Made by a program: the position numbers and the translations under genes. Of a stretch of DNA of 64,000 nt, positions 43,474 through 53,933 are shown piece after piece. The stretch is taken from positions 4,836,001-4,900,000 of the forward strand of contig NC_134035.1 in NCBI RefSeq assembly GCF_964204645.1. Direction: 5' to 3'. Source of the DNA: Tubulanus polymorphus (lineage: Eukaryota; Animalia; Nemertea). Every line of letters starts with the position of its first letter. Positions within the stretch are counted from its first letter, which is position 1. A model generated the notes under the pieces. It made no database searches and was not told the DNA's origin. It saw only the letters and a program-made list of their open reading frames with translations.

Positions 43474-46400
43474 ATGACGTCCACGGCACCCGCCGCTGAT
43501 ATCGACGCCGCTTACAAACCCTTCAAAGGCGACGATTTCGACGACGAAGTGAACGATCCGTTGAAGGAACCCGAACGAGCTCCTCCCGGCGAACCGGAGG
43601 ATATTTCCACCGATCAGGACGGCGGACTCGTCAAACAGGTTTTACGGATAGGATGGGGCGAATCGCCGTTGTCCGGTGATAAAGTTCGCGTTCATTATTT
43701 GGGAACATTTTTAGACGGCACGAAATTCGACTCGAGCTACGACCGAAATGAGTTCTTCGAATTTGAATTGGGGAAAGGTACGTGTGACCTATATTACGTC
43801 CTTTTCATATTAAGATGGCCTTTTTGGAATTTTATCAAATTCTGTGAAACTTTCAGTTTCTAAGACGAAAATCATTTTGCCCTTATCTCCAAACAGTGAT
43901 TTAATCCAATTTGGCCGCCTTAATATGCATGAGGCGTACTGTATTATGTGTATTAATGATGAACAATAAAGTAAGCCAACAATTCAACATTTAACATGTC
44001 TACTTATAGGTCAGGTTATTAAAGCCTGGGACATCGGCGTTCCAACCATGAAACGAAACGAAAAAGCCAAGTTCGTCTGCAAACCCGAATACGCTTACGG
44101 GGAACACGGCAGCGGAAAAATACCGCCGCACGCTACGTTAGTTTTCGAAATCGAGTTGAAAGATTGGACGAGTGAAGATATCTCGCCGAAAGGCAGCGAA
44201 GGATTGATTTACAGGCGAACTCTTCGTAAGGGTGAAGGTTACAAGATGCCCAACGATGGTGGTGTAGTGGAAGGTAATATTTCTGATTGCGTTTGAAGTA
44301 GTATTTATTTAACACTTTTTTAAAATCAATTTTTATACTGGCATGCATTAGTTTCGACTGTAGTTTTACTGAAACCTAGAAACTGTACTCCTTCAGACAG
44401 TCTGTAGCCTGTAACCATTCCCTGTCAGACATGATTCCACCCTTTCAGATTTTCACCATTTTAGTGTTAAGCGTGGACGATCAGTTTATGAAAGTATGCT
44501 GATGAAATATGGAATGTCTGGTGTTTGTAGTTCATTTTCAATTAAAATGTCTTAGGTGAAATTCGGGGTCCAGTTTCATAGACTGGTATCATCTTTAACC
44601 TAGGGGCCCGTTTTGTAGACTGGTATTAACTTTAACCCAGGGCTTAACTCAGTTGCAAATGAATTGAGTTAGCCCCTGGGGTAAAGTTAGTACTAGTCTA
44701 TAAAATGGGGCCCTGGACGCATGTGAAGTATGGATGATCAGTTTATGCTGATAGTGAGGTTGTACAGGGTGCGGGCTGCAGACTGAATCCATATCTGTGT
44801 TAAATTCTAAACCTAATCTAATCCTTCTCTGGAAGGGTATCAGGACAATTCCCCCCCCCCCCCGAATGAAATCTTTTTAATGTTGAAGTAACACAGATAT
44901 TTACTTCAAATTAATTACACAAAGTGAACTAATACTAGCTTATTACTCAAGGACTGCTTTAAAATTTTTGATCTGCACACAACATCAGTAATTCTATATC
45001 TTATAAATCTATATTCAATAATATACAAATGAATTTCTAAGTAAAGTATTTAGGTGGTGTTAATCCAAATGATAATCAAAAAGGATTTTATTCGGGGGGG
45101 GGGGGCAATTGTCCTAGAATCCTCTGGAAGTTAGGGCAATAACCTTGCACTCAAGTACAGCCTTCTGGCTTACCCATTGTCCTTTCCAAATTATCTGATG
45201 CTGTATTTATGAAATTTATTGTAAAAGGGAGATAAGTGAAGAAATTTTATTCTAACAGTGCACATCGTCGGCCATTACGATAAAAAACAATTCGACGATC
45301 GCGAAGTGAAATTCGTCGTCGGCGAAGGCAGCGAATCGGGAATCATCGACGGAATCGAACACGCCGTGAAGAAGTTCAAGCAGGGTGAGAAATCGCGGCT
45401 GAAAATCAAATCGAAACTAGCGTTCGGTAAAGATGGCAAAGAGGAATGGGGAATCCCGGCAGATGCGGATATCGAATACGACGTCGAGTTGAAGAATTTT
45501 GAGCGTGTACGTATGATTTAATGGTTTGGCTGATCGTGATGCTTAGAATCCCTAAAAACCTTTGAGTCGGAGTTTTTGAAAAACTGTATTCTTCTTTTAT
45601 AGGCTAAAGAAGGTTGGGAAATGGACGCAGAAGAGAAACTTGACCAGTCGCAAATAGTTAAAGACAAAGGAACGAATTATTTCAAGGTCAGTTAAATACG
45701 TGAAATTCAGTTGATCGAAGAAAGTGTTTCGTAAAATGTGCCTTACTCAGTTACTGTAAATATTTTTGATTGAGTTATAAAGGAATACTGAGTTCGGGAC
45801 TCGGTTCAAGTATTGTCAAATTTATACCGAGAATTGGCGAAATTAAACCACAAATTTCAGCTATTTTGAATTGAAGGCTAGTTCCTCTTTATTTTTATGC
45901 AAAAAAAAACAACAATTACGAGTTGAAGTTTTGGAAACGTCCAATATCGATTTGTAGATTTTCTTTAATTGAATTAAAACGGTAACTTTAAATCTTATTT
46001 TATTTGTAACTTCGAAGGATGGAAAATATAAATTAGCGGTGAAACAATACAAGCAAGTGATCGATTATCTGGAGGAGAAACAGGATCATGAGTTTAACGG
46101 GGACGATGAGAAAACTCGCCGCTCGAAACTCATGTCGGCGGCGTATTTCAACATGAGTTTATGTTACATCAAAGTAAAGAACTGGTTCGAGGCTTACCGA
46201 GCGGCCGACCGCGGACTCGACCTCGATAAGAATAACGAGAAGGGCCTCTATCGTCGTGGTTTGGTGAGTAGCGAGCGAATATAGATATGTTTCATTTAAG
46301 GTGTGAGAAAGGAATGGCTGGTATCTGATCCATAAAGCCACAACAGAATCTCAAGTTAAACAAAATTGATCCTTGAAAATAGTATATATGTCTTTGTACG

Positions 46401-49400
46401 ATACTGGAACATACTGTGGAACCTCGTTACGACGAACTCGGACACAACGATTCATCGGATATAACAAATATAGAACTTTGTCCCAAGTCAGATAATCTAA
46501 TTAATTACATGCTGGATATGAAGAACTATGGGTTACAACGAGCATGTTTTCTGGTCCCGTGAAGCTCGTTGTAACGAGGTTCCACTGTGTATACTATTTT
46601 CAAGGATGAATTTTGTTTTAGTTGTGATTCTGTTGAGGCTTTATAGATCAGTCGACTCTACTGGTTGTAGTGTCAGGTCTAGTTAGGCTTAAGTTGTGTA
46701 TCCATAATCGGTGCACTAGGCTGATGTAGATAACTCCTTACGAGTCATTGCTAGGAGTCACTTCTCACCCTGTAGAACCACTAATCTGAAATCAGGTTCT
46801 TGTAAGTGCAGTAGACTGCTTACATCTTAAGTTAGCCTATGGAAATTCAATTGCTATACAATTGAAATTAGGTTCTTAAATTTTTTGTTGACAATCAGCT
46901 GATAAATTCTAGTTAAGAGGCACCCGAAGTTAGACTGTGGAAATTTAATTGATATTCAATAGAAATCAGGTTCTTAAGATTTTACTTTACATTAAGCCGA
47001 TAAATTCTAGTTAAGAAGAGCCCGTCTTTGATGCGCGTGCGCTTTTCATTTCAGGCTCGTTACGAATTACGCGATTTCGACGAAGCTGAGAGGGATTTGA
47101 AACGCGTTCTCGAAATCGACCCGAAGAACAAAGCCGCGCATAATCAACTGATACTGTGTCGACAGAAAATCAAAACGGAGAGGGAGGTGGCGAAAAAGAA
47201 ATACTTCGGCATGTTCGATAAGTTCGCTAAGATCGACGAAAAGGTACGAGATAAAAGATTTCTATTACCTCAAGTCTTTCAGTGCTGTCTTAAAAGTGTC
47301 CCTAAAGCGTGGAGCAGTATGGCCGAGTGATTGGAGTGCTCGGCTCTGGGAAGCCAGGTCGTGGGTTCGAAACCCCGTACATTGCCGTAGTGTCCTCGGG
47401 CAAGACACTTATCCTCATCGCCTCTCTCCACCCAGGAGTAAATGGGTACCTGGTCTGATGGATGACTCCTGAGCGCCTAGCAGCTGCTCGGATGTTACCT
47501 CTCCCCAGGGAGAGATGACTGATACATGGAATAGAGTTATAGGCTGGGGGTAATAATACCAAGTTTGGAGCGCATTTGAACAAGACTCTAGTTTGGATAC
47601 TTGCGCTATGTAAATGTCAATTATTATTATTATTATTATTATTATAAAGTGCTGGAGATAATTTGAAACTTTAAAAAGAATTCCACCCCAGTGTTCAATA
47701 ACAGGCATAGCACTTTCATCGCCAATTTATACACTGCACTGCGGTGTAGATGTGCTGGTAGGGTTGAAAACGAACGCTATGAGATGGGAAAACACACGAC
47801 ATACCGGTACATAGTCTTAATGTTTCTAGCAGAATGCTTAACCATTTTCATGGTACAGTCAAATTCGAGACGGTCATTTGGTCGATGACTTACCAGTATC
47901 CAAATGACGATTTACGCTTAGTAAATTGAATTGGGAAATTACAAACTGGAATTCAAAAAATGAAAAACGACTTCAGTAATGTGTTGATATTACTGAGACT
48001 TGGGTTCGGCAGTATTTATTTGAAAGATAAACTTGAAATACGTAAATGAGAAAGATATCAGCATTTGATCATTCATTATTTACTACAAAGAAATCCGTGT
48101 AATTGCTGCCGCGTTTTGATGAACTGATTTTTGATTCATCTCTAAACAGAAAGCAAAAGAGAACAAACAAAACGGCGACGGTATGAAAAAGATCGAGGAT
48201 TGGAAGAACGAAGAGGCAGACGGAATGATCTCGCTCGAACAGGAAGCCGAAGCGTTCGGCGAAGAGATTAACGTCGTGAAAGAAGAGAAGAAGGATAGAA
48301 GTGAGAAGATGGATGCGACCGAGATGCCCACGGATCACCCCGGTAAATAGACATTACTTTCATTTCGGTATATTTCATGTGCTTTGCTAAAATCTCCACA
48401 AACAACAAGAAAAAAAGCTCGAGGTTATTCTGACTATGTAAACCCAGGGGCCTGTTCCATAGTCGAGACTTACGACCAAAAGTGGTCTTAAATCTTAAAT
48501 CTGGTCTTGAGTTGATAGATTGGCTATATAACCAAGATGGTCTTAGACTGTCTTGAGTCTAAGCCCTGTCTATGTGGAACCAGCCCCAGGGCTCAGTTGC
48601 ACGGTTATGACTTAAAAAAGGTCTTGAATCTTACACAAATGGTCTTAGATTGTGATATTGGCTACGAAAGCTAATTAGTTTAGTCTAGACCAGTTTCGAA
48701 TCTCTAAGTCTTTACTCAGTAACTAACCCCAGGAGTCCGAGTTCGTAGATCTAGACCTAGTATTGATAACAAAAAGTAAATGGCTACGATGATGAACGTT
48801 ATTGTAGCTATCCCCGACGACTTGACGGGCAGCCCGCTCGAGTGCCCTCATCTCGCTATGGTCGACGCCATGAAGAAGGCGTACGAAGACAAACAGAAAA
48901 TCGATAAAATCAAAGCGGAAAAATCGAATAAAGGTACAACGACGAGTAGTAACGATTGCGGTCAACGGCGCTTGTCCTTTGAAACAAGCGAATGTTAATT
49001 CTGCAAGTATTCGAAAAACATTTGTTACGTATTAGGTACTGCATAGGTAAGCGTCTCTTAGCATACGTTGTGATCGGTGTATTGTATGCCTCGTAAAAAG
49101 GACAAGCACTTGACCCCCATATCGTCATTACATGTGCAAGTTTGAGCATAAAACATGCATGTCTATTACGTATATTTATGATGCTTCACTCGTCTTGTTG
49201 TTTAATGTAAATAAAATAGCATGATTTGTTTATTCTTTCTCACAAAGATATGTTGGATTTTTTCATACACATATTTTACTCCCGACCCTGTGAGTAAGCG
49301 TCGCACTAGCAACTACAGACGTAGTCATCGACATACACATAGACATACACAGAGTGGTATTGATTACTGTTATCGCGAATATTGATGTCGTTTTCTCGCG

Positions 49401-51306
49401 CCGAGTCGAAGCAAGACAAGAATTGATCAGTTATTGATCTGCGCGCTCTGTCACAGAACTAGCACTCATTAAGACATCGCGTCGTTAGCAGTAATTACTA
49501 ATTATTTGTCGTCTGCCACTATGCACGGTAATATTGATTTATTCGTAATACCGATGGTCATTTCGTAATGTATATTACGCAGATAAGGCGAAAAAAGAGA
49601 GGGAAGAAAAAGAGAAAAAGTTTGAAGAAGCTCAATCAGCCCATCCCCATATAGAAGGTATCCAGTGATAGCGAATAGTAAATTTTTGATTTAGTTTTGA
49701 TTAAAAAGAGAATATGAAATCCTAATCATTGAAATTAAAAGTACAGACGGTTCTTAGAATGAGCAATGTAGCTGACGAATTTTGTTTTAAGTACCAACCG
49801 ATACGGACGGTAACCCGATATTAGAATGCCCTCATCTGGCGATGGTCGATGCGATGAAAAAAGCGTATGAAGATAAACAAAAACAAGAAGAGGAGACGAA
49901 ACAAAAGAAAATGGCCGCAGCAGAGGAGGCAGCAAAAGGTACAAATGAACCAAAATTATGGAGAATATATGGAGAATAAAGAATCCATTCGGTTCATCGA
50001 GTTGACTTTGTTTTAAATCAATGAAGTTGACCCTGTTTTATAGAAAAAGCTCTGAAAAAAGAACGAGAAGAAGCTCAGAAGCGACTGAGCGAAGCCCGGT
50101 CGGCCCATCCCGATATCGAAGGTATATCACGAATCATAGCTGTAGTTGGTATCGAGAAACTTTGTTGCCGCAGAGAATTGAGTTTGACGCGATTTAACTT
50201 TTGAAAATTTGAATTAAAGTACCGACTGACACTGATGGTAACCCGATATTAGAATGCCCTCATCTGGCGATGGTTGACGCGATGAAAAAGGCGTATGAAG
50301 ATAAATTAAAACAAGAGGAGGAGACAAAACGAAAGAAATTGGCTGCTGCAGAAGATGCTAAAGGTATCGAAGATGGTCTTCACTTGTTGAGGATGCAGAA
50401 ATCTTGCATTTTTGTGTCACGGTGTGTTTCTGACCTTTGTTGATGTTTTCCCATTACATTCTTGTGTAGAAAAAGCTTTGTTAAGGAAAATGGAAGCTCA
50501 GAAGAGACTGAATGAGGCTCAGAACGCCCATCCTAATATCGAAGGTACTTTCATAGTAGCCATAGTCTTTCACGTAGCGCGAGATTTAGATGCAGATATC
50601 TTACGTTTTCGAGTGATATACTTATCGTACATGTACATAATTTGAATTGAAGTGCCCAGCGACACGGACGGTAACCCGATATTAGAATGCCCTCATCTGG
50701 CGATGGTTGACGCGATGAAAAAGGCGTATGAAGACAAACAAAAACAAGACCGGCAAAAATTACAACTCGCGCAAGACGAGAAATGCAGCAGAGAAGGTAG
50801 CATTTGCAGTAGATAGTTGAGAATTAGAAATCGCACAGATTCGTGTCGCAGTAGAGAGTACAGCACTGAGTTAATAGCAGTTATGGAATTGAGATCGTGG
50901 TCGATTCTAGGCCCCGAAACGGTCGAAGATTTGAGCTTAAAATGACGCGGAAGTTGAAGAAAAGTTTGTGGAATTCCATTCCACTACAGGATAAGAGACA
51001 TATTATCCACTTTAGGATGATAAGAGACTTATTCAAGCACTGATTTCAAAGACCTATTTTAATGCTAGACATAGAATTTACCCATTTATATACTTGTAGC
51101 TGTGTTTTATTGCTGTTGTTGCCCTGCATTCATTTACGATTATATATAACGATGTTTTCTTTCACATTTGCAGGTCATTTCTTACTAAAAACTAAATTTC
51201 ATTAAAATTGAATGGACTGATTAATCGATAAAGTCATAGCAAAGATTGCACTGATGATAAGTTTGCAAAATTTTTCGTTTCAGAGACCGAAGCCAATAAA
51301 GTGTGA
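43474..51306 (+). CDS. FKBP4: FKBP4/FKBP52-type peptidyl-prolyl isomerase (2 FKBP domains + TPR) with a repeated C-terminal extension; ~779 aa long form, ~511 aa if exon 7 reads through to the stop at 48350
   Basis: Core exons 43474-43777, 44010-44273, 45259-45506, 45603-45686, 46018-46263, 47055-47243, 48150-48342 ([77 protein letters not shown]). Extension exons 48808-48933, 49583-49657, 49792-49938, 50044-50121, 50220-50363, 50470-50544, 50653-50796. Terminal exon uncertain: 51284-51306, or from 51174 or 50911. Confidence 0.9.
44836..45121. mobile_element. Mutator-like MITE with a 9-bp TSD
   Basis: CTCTGGAAG at 44827-44835 and 45122-45130; TIRs AGGACAATT(C)nGAAT / ATTC(G)nCAATTGTCCT. Confidence 0.8.
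46414..46587. mobile_element. Tigger-like MITE inside an older inverted-repeat element (46325-46650)
   Basis: CTGTGGAACCTCGTTAC...GTAACGAGGTTCCACTG; outer arms 46325-46387 and 46590-46650 are imperfect reverse complements. Confidence 0.7.
47311..47645 (+). mobile_element. tRNA-derived CORE-like SINE with an (ATT)n tail, inserted into a piggyBac-like MITE
   Basis: A box TGGCCGAGTG, B box GGTTCGAAACC, CORE-like GTGTCCTCGGGCAAGACACTT...GTAAATGGG, tail GCGCTATGTAAATGTCA(ATT)n; approximate TSD TAAAGYG. Confidence 0.85.
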
Positions 51307-53933
51307 AAATCTACGATGCGAGATTGTCGTCAAGGACAACGCAGCAGACGCGCTGATCTCAATATGAAATGATTAAATGTAGCTAAAAGGTTCAAAACGG
51401 GAGATGAAAAAACGTTTCTTCACTTGAGCAGCTAAACTACTGCGGGTGACTGCATTTAAACGGTCAGTATGATATGCAAAAAGTTAAAAAATATGGTGCA
51501 GTTACAGAAATGTTGAATCCAGTTTCGCAGACTGTAAGTTGAAATATGAACCTTTCATTGTTTAGGCCTACACTCTCGACGATTATAGATTGAAATTTTA
51601 CTCTTTTGGAAACGTAATCGGTAATTTTAACGTTGACTGTGGAACTGGTGCTAGGAATGAAATATAACATTGTTGCATGCATCTCATATAGCGCGGTATT
51701 ATATGAAACATTTTGTTTATGTCGTCAGTTGGCATTCATATTGATAATCTATGTGCAGTTGACTAACTATCTGTAAAGCATTTATCAGCGATAGTAGACA
51801 TGTAGTTCATTATTCTGTAAAAGCATTTAAAAAAAGAACCAGCTCTACAGTCGTACGAGTTCAAAAATTACGCAATAGTTTTCACGGCCGTCAATGAAAG
51901 ATTTTGAATTTCACTCAGATAAGACTTGAGTATTTGATGTTTTGTTATTTTAAGAAATGAACCGATTTCTAAAAATTTCAAAATTATGCAGGTTATAAGT
52001 AGTTGATGAAGATGCTTACAAAACGTTTTCCGCCACCCACCTCCTCCCGACAAAATTTCGCCAAATTTTTTGGCAGTAAATCGGTTTTTCATCATTTTGT
52101 AATTTTCGCATTTTTCGTTACGCGAAAGATAACTACATTCCTCGTAATGCGTGAATATTCGGTCATGAATAGTTTGTAGTTTGTTTATAAGTTTAAGCCT
52201 ATGTATATATATTATCTATGAAGAATAATTGTTTGTGTTGTACCATAATTGTTCTGAAGGCCACGAAAATAATCCTAAAATTTAACTTACCGATATTTTA
52301 CATTCTTATATCGTATTCTCCATGTCGAGTACTTCGCTGTACGTCTGGTATCGTCTGAAATAAACCAAATTGTTCTTCAACTTGAATCGAAATTCAGTTT
52401 TTGTTTGTTGTCAGTTTTACTGTAATGGACTCTTTGATCTTGGCGAATTCAAAACTATACAGGTTGAGGAACTGTCTGGTCATGTCGGAAGTGTGAAGCC
52501 CAGGCTTTGTTAGCCACGCTCTTGAGGAAACCAGTCCAGAACCCACACTCGAATGGCAGGCACGTTATACATGTTGCAGTCATAATAAGGATTTGCCCGA
52601 TAATATTGTTAGGATGATTATAAAGATAGGTGCCCAGTTGAGAGTTGCATGCACAAGTACCTTTTACCAAGGAAGTATTACACTTCCCTGCTTTTACAGA
52701 AGACATACGTAGTTAAGGGCTCTGTAGAATCTTGCTGCTGTGAAGCATTTATCAGGCCCCAAGGCTGCCATTTACAGTCAAATTCAAATTACTAAGTGTA
52801 AACATGATAACCATCCAAACTATGAGGACTTGAATAAGTTTGACTTCATAGTGTGCAATGCCTATACATAGAACTTGTTACATGGAATCATGCCCGAGGA
52901 CTATTTTTTCACTTAAGAGCATGTTACAAGAACGTCACTAAGATGTTTTGCCATCATCAAATCTTATCAAAATTCTGTAGCCATCCAGCATCATACTCAT
53001 CTACAAGATAACATACGCAACAATGCTTTTAACCCCAGCTTGTCAACTGGACACGCTGTTCCTTGTCAAGTCATCAAAATCATATATCCCCAACCCATTT
53101 TCCAGGGGATTATGAAATACTGGTAGCCGTCTAGTCGGACACCTTACACTGTATCAAATATCAGCCTTCCACTATAGGTCAGACAGCCTCAAATAGCATT
53201 CTAACAGATTTAAACTCCTCGAATAAACGAACAATGTCTCGATTTTGATGATAAAACCAATTTATTCACGAAAAATTAACAACTAAAGTCATGGATGTGT
53301 GCATTAAATATTTGTTCCCAAAAAATCATTGTCGATTACATCACAGTTAAAATACGAGGGGTTTATATTCTACAGTAAAAAGCGCTTTTAATATGTTCCC
53401 AGCTCCACAGTCCTGCGATAACATTTGACTTTTAGCGTTAAATAATTGAAAATAAACTAATGAGACAAATCTAAAAATAAATTTCATTAAAAGCCTTTTC
53501 TATAAGCTATAAGTGGAATTATTAAGAATATAAAATGGTAGAATATTAGAAAAGTGTGAAAATTAGTATAGATGGATACTTAAGTGTGAGCATTGCCGAA
53601 AAATAATAGCGTACAATTGAACGAATCAGAAATCAGTTTCAAGAAGTAGACCATATTTCACGCAGAATTTAGCACCAACATTTATGCGTCGAAACAAAGA
53701 AGGATATCATGAATCAAAAATAATTTAAACAACCAACGAATAAGTATAAACTCTTCCATCCAATATAATCATCGGCCATAGAAATATGGCGTCGACACGG
53801 GCTTCCCCGATAGTAACTCTGTATACATTCGTACACGTAAGGAAGTCGAAAATGTGACCGTCAGCTTTCTGAGAGTCACGCGCGGACGGCTGATAGTCGA
53901 CAGTTCGCAGATCTCTCTATCGTAGATTCTCGC

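What the first reader, a model, noticed from the sequence alone, without database searches (positions are those of the whole stretch)
48320..50796. FKBP52 with a spliced tail of four His-Pro...Cys-Pro-His modules: candidate heme/metal-sensing Hsp90 co-chaperone
Seen: after the TPR region, exon 7 ends MPTDHP at a phase-1 donor (G|GTAAAT). Seven symmetric phase-1 exons follow in A-B-A-B-A-B-A order. Spliced, they give [34 protein letters not shown] and three copies of AHP(H/D/N)IEVP(T/S)[26 protein letters not shown], joined by E/K/A-rich helical spacers. The peptide core is invariant while third codon positions and introns differ, which suggests purifying selection. Each HP...CP module is only formed across a splice junction. 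Known: Cys-Pro plus a nearby His is the signature of heme regulatory motifs, and the vertebrate FKBP4 I know has no such tail. Inference: a lineage-specific, splice-tunable (0-4 modules) heme/metal/redox-binding extension.
Basis: partly seen in the sequence, partly recalled or inferred. Interest (0 to 1): 0.85.

Follow-up and report, generated by a model that had tools for sequence, protein, structure and literature searches.

The report
Optional repeat tail on nemertean FKBP4
The single FKBP4-like Hsp90 co-chaperone gene of the ribbon worm Tubulanus polymorphus has seven optional mini-exons in its last intron that encode four near-identical Cys-Pro-His loop-helix modules; these are strongly conserved as peptide, have no relatives in any database searched, are skipped by the main mRNA, and their proposed heme or metal binding is untested.

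Summary
Seven AG/GT-bounded exons lie at 48808-50796. All are multiples of 3 and all are phase 1-1. They alternate A-B-A-B-A-B-A and encode four modules with an invariant 19-residue block, L-E-C-P-H...Y-E-D-K.

The host gene is the only FKBP4-like gene (two FKBP domains plus TPR) of this 268-Mb genome. RefSeq model XP_074660178.1 already joins exon 7 to A1-B1-A2-B2-A3.

A1 differs from A2-A4 at 9-11 synonymous positions over 21 codons, with no amino-acid change. That indicates an old duplication under strong purifying selection, so the peptide is translated and matters.

The RNA evidence from one run, available only as contigs, gives a different picture:
- The dominant transcript (depth 512) splices exon 7 directly to the terminal exon and skips the whole array.
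- The array is covered at depth 15-47, mostly unspliced.
- Only B1>A2 and A2>B2 are seen spliced. Exon 7>A1 is not seen.

The module has no homologue among 1.84 billion representative proteins, Pfam, PDB sequences or metagenome DNA. None of 120 FKBP4 orthologues has a Cys-Pro in the tail.

Heme binding is plausible. The core resembles the IRP2 heme regulatory motif, and the Cys-Pro sits at a loop-to-helix junction. It remains untested. Soft-metal binding or plain protein docking fit equally well. I rate this a new variant of a known kind, of moderate interest.

The parts
43474..47243 (+). Exons 1-6 of the FKBP4-like gene: two FKBP PPIase domains and the TPR domain. Exon pieces lie at about 43474-43785, 44009-44281, 45249-45512, 45600-45690, 46015-46263 and 47055-47243.
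   Evidence: tblastn of P0001 on the window. Pfam FKBP_C and TPR. RNA joints 46262>47054 and 47241>48148 at depth 512.
48150..48342 (+). Exon 7: the acidic tail carrying a motif conserved in spiralians (D-W-x-N-x-x-A-D-G-M...E-A-F-G-E). It ends T-D-H-P plus the first base of a split codon (phase-1 donor, G|gtaaat).
   Evidence: the contig ends at 48342. The motif is shared with P0007, P0008 and P0038.
48808..48933 (+). Cassette exon A1, the most divergent module copy (loop [11 protein letters not shown], then C-P-H and the helix). It has the weakest acceptor of the array (pyrimidine fraction 0.42).
   Evidence: It is included in RefSeq model P0001. In run X2 it lies inside an unbroken, unspliced contig spanning 48479-49657.
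49583..49657 (+). Cassette exon B1: a Lys/Glu-rich helix ending A-H-P-H-I-E.
   Evidence: Its donor is used: RNA joint to 49792 at depth 11.6.
49792..49938 (+). Cassette exon A2: module 2 plus an E/K/A-rich spacer.
   Evidence: RNA joints into it (49657>49792) and out of it (49938>50044) are seen.
50044..50121 (+). Cassette exon B2: a helical spacer ending A-H-P-D-I-E.
   Evidence: acceptor used at depth 7; donor not seen used.
50220..50363 (+). Cassette exon A3: module 3.
   Evidence: In X2 its donor is read through, and the RefSeq model also reads through this donor into the intron.
50470..50544 (+). Cassette exon B3: a helical spacer ending A-H-P-N-I-E.
   Evidence: No spliced junction is seen. 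It is not in the RefSeq model.
50653..50796 (+). Cassette exon A4: module 4, with a tail ending ...E-K-C-S-R-E.
   Evidence: It carries four polymorphisms relative to run X2, all at third codon positions: three synonymous and one Met>Ile.
51284..51306 (+). Coding part of the terminal exon (phase-1 entry; gives E-T-E-A-N-K-V-stop). The 3' UTR continues beyond 51900.
   Evidence: RNA joint 48342>51286 at depth 512 with GT..AG ends, and contig 51286-51900+ at depth 474. Sequence.
48780..48998 (+). An ATG-initiated 72-codon ORF in frame with A1 that runs into the retained A1-B1 intron. It would be a possible stand-alone one-module product only if an internal transcript start exists.
   Evidence: ORF list. 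There is no evidence for a transcript start here.

Best explanation
This is an array of seven symmetric (phase 1-1) cassette exons inside the last intron of the single FKBP4-like Hsp90 co-chaperone gene of Tubulanus polymorphus. By default, exon 7 splices straight to the terminal exon. That gives a conventional protein of about 516 residues ending ...T-D-H-P-E-T-E-A-N-K-V. When cassette exons are included, they insert in frame up to four copies of one unit. Each unit is an acidic, proline-rich loop (A-H-P[15 protein letters not shown]), followed by a Cys that caps a helix beginning [16 protein letters not shown]. The helix continues as a 40-50-residue Glu/Lys/Ala-rich spacer. The result would be a beads-on-a-rod tail displaying four identical sites about 70 residues apart on a protein that docks on Hsp90. 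Shown here: the exon anatomy, the skipping isoform, two internal splice junctions, strong purifying selection on the peptide, and the absence of homologues. Inferred: the module is a binding site whose helix face (His, Met, Val, Met, Tyr) together with the Cys-Pro cap contacts a ligand. I put about 45% on a thiolate-ligated cofactor being part of the function. That splits into heme about 25% and Cu(I)/Zn about 15-20%. I put about 30% on plain protein docking. Inclusion is presumably conditional on tissue, stage or stress.
For: Exon anatomy and reading frame. Host gene identity and single copy. A public model joins exon 7 to A1-B1-A2-B2-A3 (XP_074660178.1). RNA: the dominant contig joins 48342 to the terminal exon at depth 512; joints 49657>49792 (depth 11.6) and 49938>50044 (depth 7) are seen; the array is covered at depth 15-47, while bins lying wholly inside the upstream introns (46591-46984, 47773-47969) read 0. 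Selection: 9-11 synonymous and 0 amino-acid differences between A1 and A2-A4 over 21 codons, and 3 of 4 polymorphisms in A4 are synonymous. Structure: an AF2 single-sequence model puts the helix start at the Pro of C-P-H, helices of 48-56 residues and loops at pLDDT about 62. His, Met, Val, Met and Tyr fall within a 100-degree arc of the helical wheel. Cassette acceptors are weaker than the constitutive ones, with pyrimidine fraction 0.42-0.58 (except B3, 0.74) against 0.68. The motif matches the descriptive pattern of CP motifs, and P-I-L-E-C-P-H-L resembles the IRP2 peptides TPILCPFHL and TPILCPHFLQPV, which bind heme at 0.3-0.8 uM (PMC10377097).
Against: In run X2 six of the eight junctions of the full model are not seen, including exon 7>A1. 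One unbroken contig runs through the A1 acceptor, the A1 donor and the B1 acceptor. In that sample A1 was therefore not used as an exon above the contig threshold, and array RNA looks mostly like a partly processed retained intron. Only one RNA run was usable, and only as contigs, which drop rare forms. No second species could be examined. No ligand has been tested. The loop before the Cys carries net charge -3, which is unfavourable for heme propionates. The whole 19-residue block is invariant, not only Cys and His, so conservation does not single out ligand residues. The AF2 model was built from a single sequence, with pTM 0.25.
Confidence: 0.55

Rival explanations
1. One reading: each module is a CP-type heme regulatory motif (Cys thiolate plus the adjacent His and/or the upstream His-Pro). 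The tail would then make the Hsp90-FKBP complex sense, buffer or hand over labile heme, with the dose set by splicing.
For: The Cys-Pro has aliphatic Ile-Leu upstream, an adjacent His, and sits at a loop-to-helix junction. These are the features listed for CP motifs in PMC10377097. It is close to the validated IRP2 motif peptides. Multiple copies are typical of HRM proteins such as HO-2 (PMC2742820, listed). Hsp90 drives heme insertion into several apo-hemeproteins (PMC8946885 and PMC9922822).
Against: There is no homology to any heme-binding domain. The loop is acidic. The constraint covers the whole helix. Any exposed Cys-Pro peptide binds hemin at micromolar affinity in vitro (AAAACPAAA, 3.8 uM), so the motif alone is weak evidence. 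Inclusion is low in the RNA seen.
Confidence: 0.25
2. The module binds a soft metal ion (Cu(I), or Zn(II)) through Cys, His and the two Met residues, helped by the acidic loop. This would link the co-chaperone to metal trafficking.
For: C-x-H-x2-M-x3-M places His, Met and Met on one helix face. The loop is rich in Asp/Glu and has a conserved His. FKBP52 is reported to interact with the copper chaperone Atox1 and to affect cellular copper (PMC2801609).
Against: It does not match a defined metal-binding domain. The Met, Val and Tyr residues could simply form a hydrophobic docking face. The second His of H-P-H is not conserved (it is D or N in copies 3 and 4).
Confidence: 0.17
3. The module is a cofactor-free short linear motif: an amphipathic helix that docks onto a protein partner, such as a client, the cytoskeleton, or the protein's own TPR or FKBP domains. 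It is displayed multivalently on stiff Glu/Lys helices.
For: All 19 core residues are invariant despite saturated synonymous change, which is typical of an interface. The model shows a helix with a hydrophobic face and long E/K/R/Q/A-rich spacers (58-90% of residues).
Against: No partner is known. The hydrophobic moment is modest (0.43 per residue). This reading does not explain why Cys-Pro-His and the upstream His-Pro recur.
Confidence: 0.3
4. The array is not part of the FKBP4-like protein today. It would be either a separate small gene or ORF transcribed from within the last intron (for example the ATG at 48780), or a retained-intron RNA whose exon-like pieces are no longer translated.
For: Exon 7>A1 is not seen. 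A1 and the A1-B1 intron lie in one unspliced contig. The array is covered contiguously, introns included. An ATG-started ORF is in frame with A1.
Against: Purifying selection on the peptide rules out 'not translated' over evolutionary time. All seven exons keep phase 1-1, which matches the phase of the exon 7 donor and the terminal acceptor and is expected only if they are spliced into this gene. The 48780 ORF would contain only one module and would leave A2-A4 unexplained. RefSeq joins them.
Confidence: 0.1

Closest known systems
FKBP4 / FKBP52 (insect FKBP59): large TPR immunophilins, Hsp90 co-chaperones
   Same: Two FKBP_C domains followed by a TPR domain and a charged C-terminal tail. It is 47-58% identical to animal orthologues over the shared part and is the only such gene in the genome.
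   Different: None of 120 orthologues has a Cys-Pro in the tail. Here up to 263 extra residues can be inserted from seven cassette exons just before the last seven residues.
CP-type heme regulatory motifs (IRP2, HRI, HO-2 and others)
   Same: A Cys-Pro dipeptide with aliphatic residues upstream and a nearby His, located between secondary-structure elements, often in several copies. The core resembles IRP2's T-P-I-L-C-P-F-H-L (PMC10377097).
   Different: The surroundings are acidic. One residue is inserted between Leu and Cys. The constraint extends over a further 15 helix residues. No binding or regulatory data exist, and there is no common descent with any HRM protein.
ER/K-type single alpha-helix spacers (named from my own knowledge, not tested against a curated set)
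   Same: Spacers of 40-50 residues that are 58-90% Glu/Lys/Arg/Gln/Ala and are predicted as continuous helices.
   Different: Here they are interrupted every ~70 residues or so by a conserved loop-helix motif. Their stability as isolated helices is not shown.
Arrays of symmetric cassette exons encoding repeated modules (exon duplication with tunable repeat number)
   Same: Same-phase exons, each a multiple of three, so any subset is in frame. The all-skipped form and some included junctions coexist.
   Different: The unit is split over two exon types (A and B), so the His-Pro and Cys-Pro-His parts come from different exons. Inclusion is very low in the sample seen.

Membership tests
FKBP4/FKBP52-type TPR immunophilin | Two FKBP-type PPIase domains | tested here: met
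   Pfam PF00254, E 4.7e-52, two stretches in P0001. The exon pieces also match individually.
FKBP4/FKBP52-type TPR immunophilin | C-terminal three-repeat TPR domain | tested here: met
   TPR_1, TPR_2 and TPR_8 hits at residues 339-424.
FKBP4/FKBP52-type TPR immunophilin | Closest relatives are FKBP4/FKBP59 orthologues | tested here: met
   The top 120 hits are named FKBP4, FKBP4-like or FKBP59, with E down to 1e-214.
FKBP4/FKBP52-type TPR immunophilin | Binds the Hsp90 MEEVD tail; PPIase activity | not testable with these tools
   Needs biochemistry.
CP-type heme regulatory motif | Cys-Pro dipeptide | tested here: met
   Read directly in all four A exons.
CP-type heme regulatory motif | Lies in a flexible loop joining secondary-structure elements, with aliphatic residues upstream | tested here: met
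   In the AF2 model, Cys is the last loop residue before the helix and Ile-Leu lie upstream. This is a single-sequence model, so the evidence is modest. Criteria are from PMC10377097.
CP-type heme regulatory motif | Cys-dependent reversible heme binding (Soret band near 370 nm), tighter than generic CP peptides | not testable with these tools
   The control peptide AAAACPAAA already binds at 3.8 uM, so a comparison with such controls is needed.
CP-type heme regulatory motif | Heme changes the protein's activity, stability or interactions | not testable with these tools
   No data.
Alternatively spliced cassette-exon array | Exons are in-frame multiples of three, of equal phase, with canonical splice sites | tested here: met
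   Lengths are 126, 75, 147, 78, 144, 75 and 144 nt, all phase 1-1 with AG...GT.
Alternatively spliced cassette-exon array | Both skipped and included forms present in RNA | tested here: inconclusive
   The skipped form is dominant (depth 512). Two of eight inclusion junctions are seen (depths 7-12). Exon 7>A1 and five others are not seen. The data are contigs of a single run.
Cu(I)-binding Met/His/Cys motifs | Clustered Met/His/Cys with M-x3-M spacing on one face | tested here: met
   His, Met and Met sit at wheel angles 100, 40 and 80 degrees. This is pattern evidence only.
Cu(I)-binding Met/His/Cys motifs | Metal binding | not testable with these tools
   No data.

The most novel reading that the evidence does not exclude
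A splice-tunable tail turns an Hsp90 co-chaperone into a multivalent carrier or sensor of labile heme (or Cu(I)). It would physically couple cofactor supply to Hsp90-driven maturation of apo-metalloproteins, using an IRP2-like Cys-Pro-His motif that arose independently in a nemertean.
Probability: 0.2. Interest if true: 0.75.

Novelty: new variant of a known kind. Interest (0 to 1): 0.45.

Why it matters
Hsp90 is known to drive heme insertion into several apo-hemeproteins, and FKBP52 has been tied to copper handling. No Hsp90 co-chaperone, however, is known to carry its own cofactor-binding repeats. If the tail binds heme or a soft metal, it would be a natural example of a chaperone adaptor with a dosage-adjustable cofactor site. 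It would also be a clean case of a heme-regulatory-type motif born de novo by exon duplication. Even without that, it is a well-defined orphan peptide module under strong selection whose ligand can be sought directly. At present it is a single-species, minor-isoform feature with no functional data.

Tried and rejected
Homology searches all came back empty:
- Pfam, exon by exon and on the public model's tail, gave nothing above cut-off.
- PDB sequence search gave only weak chance hits, to ZPR1 and ATP synthase d.
- The ESM Atlas gave no usable feature hit, and its structural rows are short-helix noise.
- A profile of the four cores against 1.84 billion representatives returned only the gene's own RefSeq model. 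Two other hits are bacterial repeat proteins without Cys, whose scores are sums of 10-15 weak partial matches.
- Word-indexed searches of the tail and of the B1-A2-B2 piece found nothing else.
- A metagenome DNA scan found nothing.

Other readings considered and rejected:
- Transposon or dispersed repeat origin: the module occurs only at this locus.
- RNA gene in the region: no Rfam match.
- EF-hand-like reading of the D-T-D-G-N loop: A1 lacks it, and the Gly and Glu positions do not fit.
- Neuropeptide-type precursor (identical peptides between spacers): the N-terminus is the cytosolic FKBP domain and there are no dibasic flanks.
- Gene conversion as the sole cause of identity: A1 is saturated at synonymous sites yet identical in peptide.

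Limits of the evidence:
- Run X5 (labelled RNA?) held none of the region, not even constitutive exons, so it says nothing.
- X3 and X4 behave like low-coverage DNA.

The only joined sequence used is the public model P0001 returned by a tool. It lacks B3-A4 and the true terminal exon, so the full four-module protein was never searched or folded.


Full report
**What is in the sequence**

Exon 7 of the upstream gene ends at 48342 with ...M-P-T-D-H-P plus one base, before gtaaat. Seven further exons follow:

| Exon | Coordinates | Length (nt) |
|---|---|---|
| A1 | 48808-48933 | 126 |
| B1 | 49583-49657 | 75 |
| A2 | 49792-49938 | 147 |
| B2 | 50044-50121 | 78 |
| A3 | 50220-50363 | 144 |
| B3 | 50470-50544 | 75 |
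| A4 | 50653-50796 | 144 |

Each exon is preceded by AG and followed by GTA. Each is a multiple of three and enters and leaves in phase 1. The introns are 465, 649, 134, 105, 98, 106 and 108 nt.

The A exons encode a loop, then C-P-H, then a helix-forming stretch and a charged spacer. The B exons encode a Lys/Glu-rich stretch ending A-H-P-x-I-E. The four A translations share an invariant 19-residue block from L-E-C-P-H to Y-E-D-K. A terminal exon starting at 51284 is also entered in phase 1 and gives E-T-E-A-N-K-V-stop.

**The host gene and organism**

Exons upstream, from 43474, carry two FKBP_C domains and TPR repeats. A profile of the module cores searched against 1.84 billion representative proteins returned one true hit, P0001. 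This is RefSeq XP_074660178.1, 'peptidyl-prolyl cis-trans isomerase FKBP4-like' of the nemertean Tubulanus polymorphus. P0001 is this very gene:
- It contains exons 1-7 followed by A1-B1-A2-B2-A3.
- It then reads through the A3 donor into the intron.
- An automatic public model therefore already joins the tail to FKBP4, but only in part and with an odd 3' end.

The gene is the only FKBP4-like gene in the 268-Mb assembly. Its closest relatives are FKBP4/FKBP59 orthologues at 47-58% identity.

**Is the tail found elsewhere?**

It is not, in anything searchable here.
- The other two profile hits are bacterial repeat proteins that lack the Cys. They score only by summing 10-15 weak partial matches.
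- Searches with the tail region and with the B1-A2-B2 piece found nothing.
- A metagenome DNA scan found nothing.
- The module occurs only at this locus in its own genome.
- Among 120 FKBP4 orthologues, none has a Cys-Pro after the TPR domain.
- Spiralian-looking orthologues (P0007, P0008 from Capitella, P0038) share the exon 7 motif D-W-x-N-x-x-A-D-G-M...E-A-F-G-E and stop shortly after it.
- No orthologue closer than 58% identity is in the databases. Absence elsewhere may therefore reflect missing relatives rather than a very young origin.

**Selection**

Over the 21-codon core, A1 differs from A2, A3 and A4 at 9-11 nucleotide positions. That is about as many as there are synonymous sites, and none changes an amino acid. 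Eleven neutral changes all being synonymous has a probability of about 1e-6 to 1e-7. The A1/A2-4 split is therefore old, and the peptide has been held constant by selection since then.

A2-A4 are closer to one another (dS 0.2-0.5), while their introns hardly align. Some short-tract conversion or nucleotide-level constraint may add to their identity.

Relative to RNA run X2, exon A4 carries four differences. All are at third codon positions: three synonymous and one Met>Ile.

**RNA evidence**

Only contigs of older runs were available. X2 is RNA, because its contigs join exons across GT..AG introns.
- Its dominant contig (depth 512) joins 46262>47054 and 47241>48148. It then joins 48342 directly to the terminal exon, skipping 2943 bases and the whole array. 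The two letters 'between' at this joint are a synonymous GAG/GAA polymorphism in the split codon.
- The main product is thus a conventional FKBP4-like protein of about 516 residues.
- The array region is nevertheless covered from about 48368 to 51312 at depth 15-47. Bins lying wholly inside the two upstream introns read 0. This RNA is therefore specific to the last intron and is not background.
- Most of this RNA is unspliced. One unbroken contig runs 48479-49657, through the A1 acceptor, the A1 donor and the B1 acceptor. Others run through B2>A3, A3>B3, B3>A4 and A4>terminal.
- Two junctions are spliced exactly as predicted: B1>A2 (49657>49792, depth 11.6) and A2>B2 (49938>50044, depth 7).
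- Contigs drop rare forms, so this shows low inclusion in that sample, not absence.
- Six of the seven cassette acceptors have poorer pyrimidine tracts than the constitutive ones. A1 is the worst at 0.42 against 0.68; B3 (0.74) is the exception. This fits default skipping.

**Structure**

An AlphaFold2 single-sequence model of P0001:496-699 (mean pLDDT 72, pTM 0.25) shows three helices of 33-56 residues; only the first two (48 and 56) are complete, since the query ends inside the third. Each starts at the Pro of C-P-H, so the Cys is the helix cap. The helices are joined by 19-20-residue loops (A-H-P[16 protein letters not shown]) at pLDDT about 62. There is no confident packing between helices.

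On a helical wheel, His, Met, Val, Met and Tyr fall within a 100-degree arc. The loop has net charge -3. The spacers are 58-90% Glu/Lys/Arg/Gln/Ala. The picture is of identical sites on stiff charged rods.

**Function**

Nothing here tests binding.

For heme:
- The motif meets the descriptive features of CP-type heme regulatory motifs: a Cys-Pro between secondary-structure elements, aliphatic residues upstream, and a nearby His that favours six-coordination (PMC10377097).
- P-I-L-E-C-P-H-L is strikingly like the IRP2 peptides TPILCPFHL and TPILCPHFLQPV, which bind heme at 0.3-0.8 uM.
- Hsp90 is known to drive heme insertion into apo-hemeproteins (PMC8946885 and PMC9922822).

Against heme, or neutral:
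- The same paper shows that AAAACPAAA binds hemin at 3.8 uM. An in-vitro Soret shift alone would therefore prove little.
- The loop is acidic.
- Conservation covers the whole helix, not just the ligand residues.

Alternatives:
- A soft-metal site (C-x-H-x2-M-x3-M plus acidic residues) is also plausible. It has a biological hook, because FKBP52 interacts with Atox1 and influences cellular copper (PMC2801609).
- A cofactor-free docking helix explains the uniform constraint best, but it does not explain the recurrent His-Pro and Cys-Pro-His.

My estimates are heme about 25%, metal about 17%, plain protein docking about 30%, and not part of the FKBP4 protein about 10%.

Exons were searched by reference. 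The only joined sequence used was the public model P0001 that a tool returned. It lacks B3, A4 and the true terminal exon, so the complete four-module form was neither searched nor folded. Both read tools were at their caps after one call each, so the splicing question could not be taken further.

**Verdict**

The feature is a real, selected, orphan, optional tail on a nemertean FKBP4. It is mostly skipped in the RNA seen, and its heme/metal role is plausible but untested. I rate it a new variant of a known kind, with interest 0.45.

Noticed in passing
window 46394-46590 and 47340-47600: Very high summed contig depth in all three holder runs (up to 6423 in X2 and 6317 in X3), with many small internal joints. 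These are high-copy dispersed repeats inside introns 5 and 6 of the FKBP4-like gene. Rfam finds no family there.
   Followed up: partly
window 48440-48720: Two to three tandem copies of an element of about 130 nt (each starting c-c-c-a-g-g-g-g-c-c-like) in the intron between exon 7 and A1. Depth is raised (244 in X2) and contigs break there, so it is likely a short interspersed repeat.
   Followed up: no
window 48780-48998: An ATG preceded by an in-frame TAA opens a 72-codon ORF that runs into A1 in its coding frame and ends in the retained A1-B1 intron. It would give a one-module peptide if an internal transcript start existed.
   Followed up: partly
window 50364-50443 (P0001 residues 700-725): The RefSeq model XP_074660178.1 ends by reading through the A3 donor into the intron (G-I-E-D-G-L-H...). 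It omits B3, A4 and the terminal exon that the dominant RNA uses. The public annotation of this gene's 3' end is therefore probably wrong or represents a retained-intron form.
   Followed up: yes
window 48195-48265 (exon 7): The tail motif D-W-x-N-x-x-A-D-G-M-x-x-L-x-Q-E-x-E-A-F-G-E is shared with Capitella and two unnamed orthologues, but not with arthropod or vertebrate FKBP4. It is a conserved spiralian-type tail element of unknown role.
   Followed up: partly
window 50717: Run X2 carries G>A here, changing the second Met of the invariant block in copy 4 to Ile (A-M-K-K to A-I-K-K). It is the only replacement polymorphism seen in the array. It lies 31 letters from a contig end, so it needs confirmation.
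   Followed up: partly
window 47620-47645: A perfect (ATT) microsatellite of 8.7 units in intron 6.
   Followed up: no
G000:C7:3326902-3327360: The only other match to the FKBP4-like protein in the genome. It is 33% identical over the TPR part (residues 263-419) and is presumably a different TPR co-chaperone.
   Followed up: no
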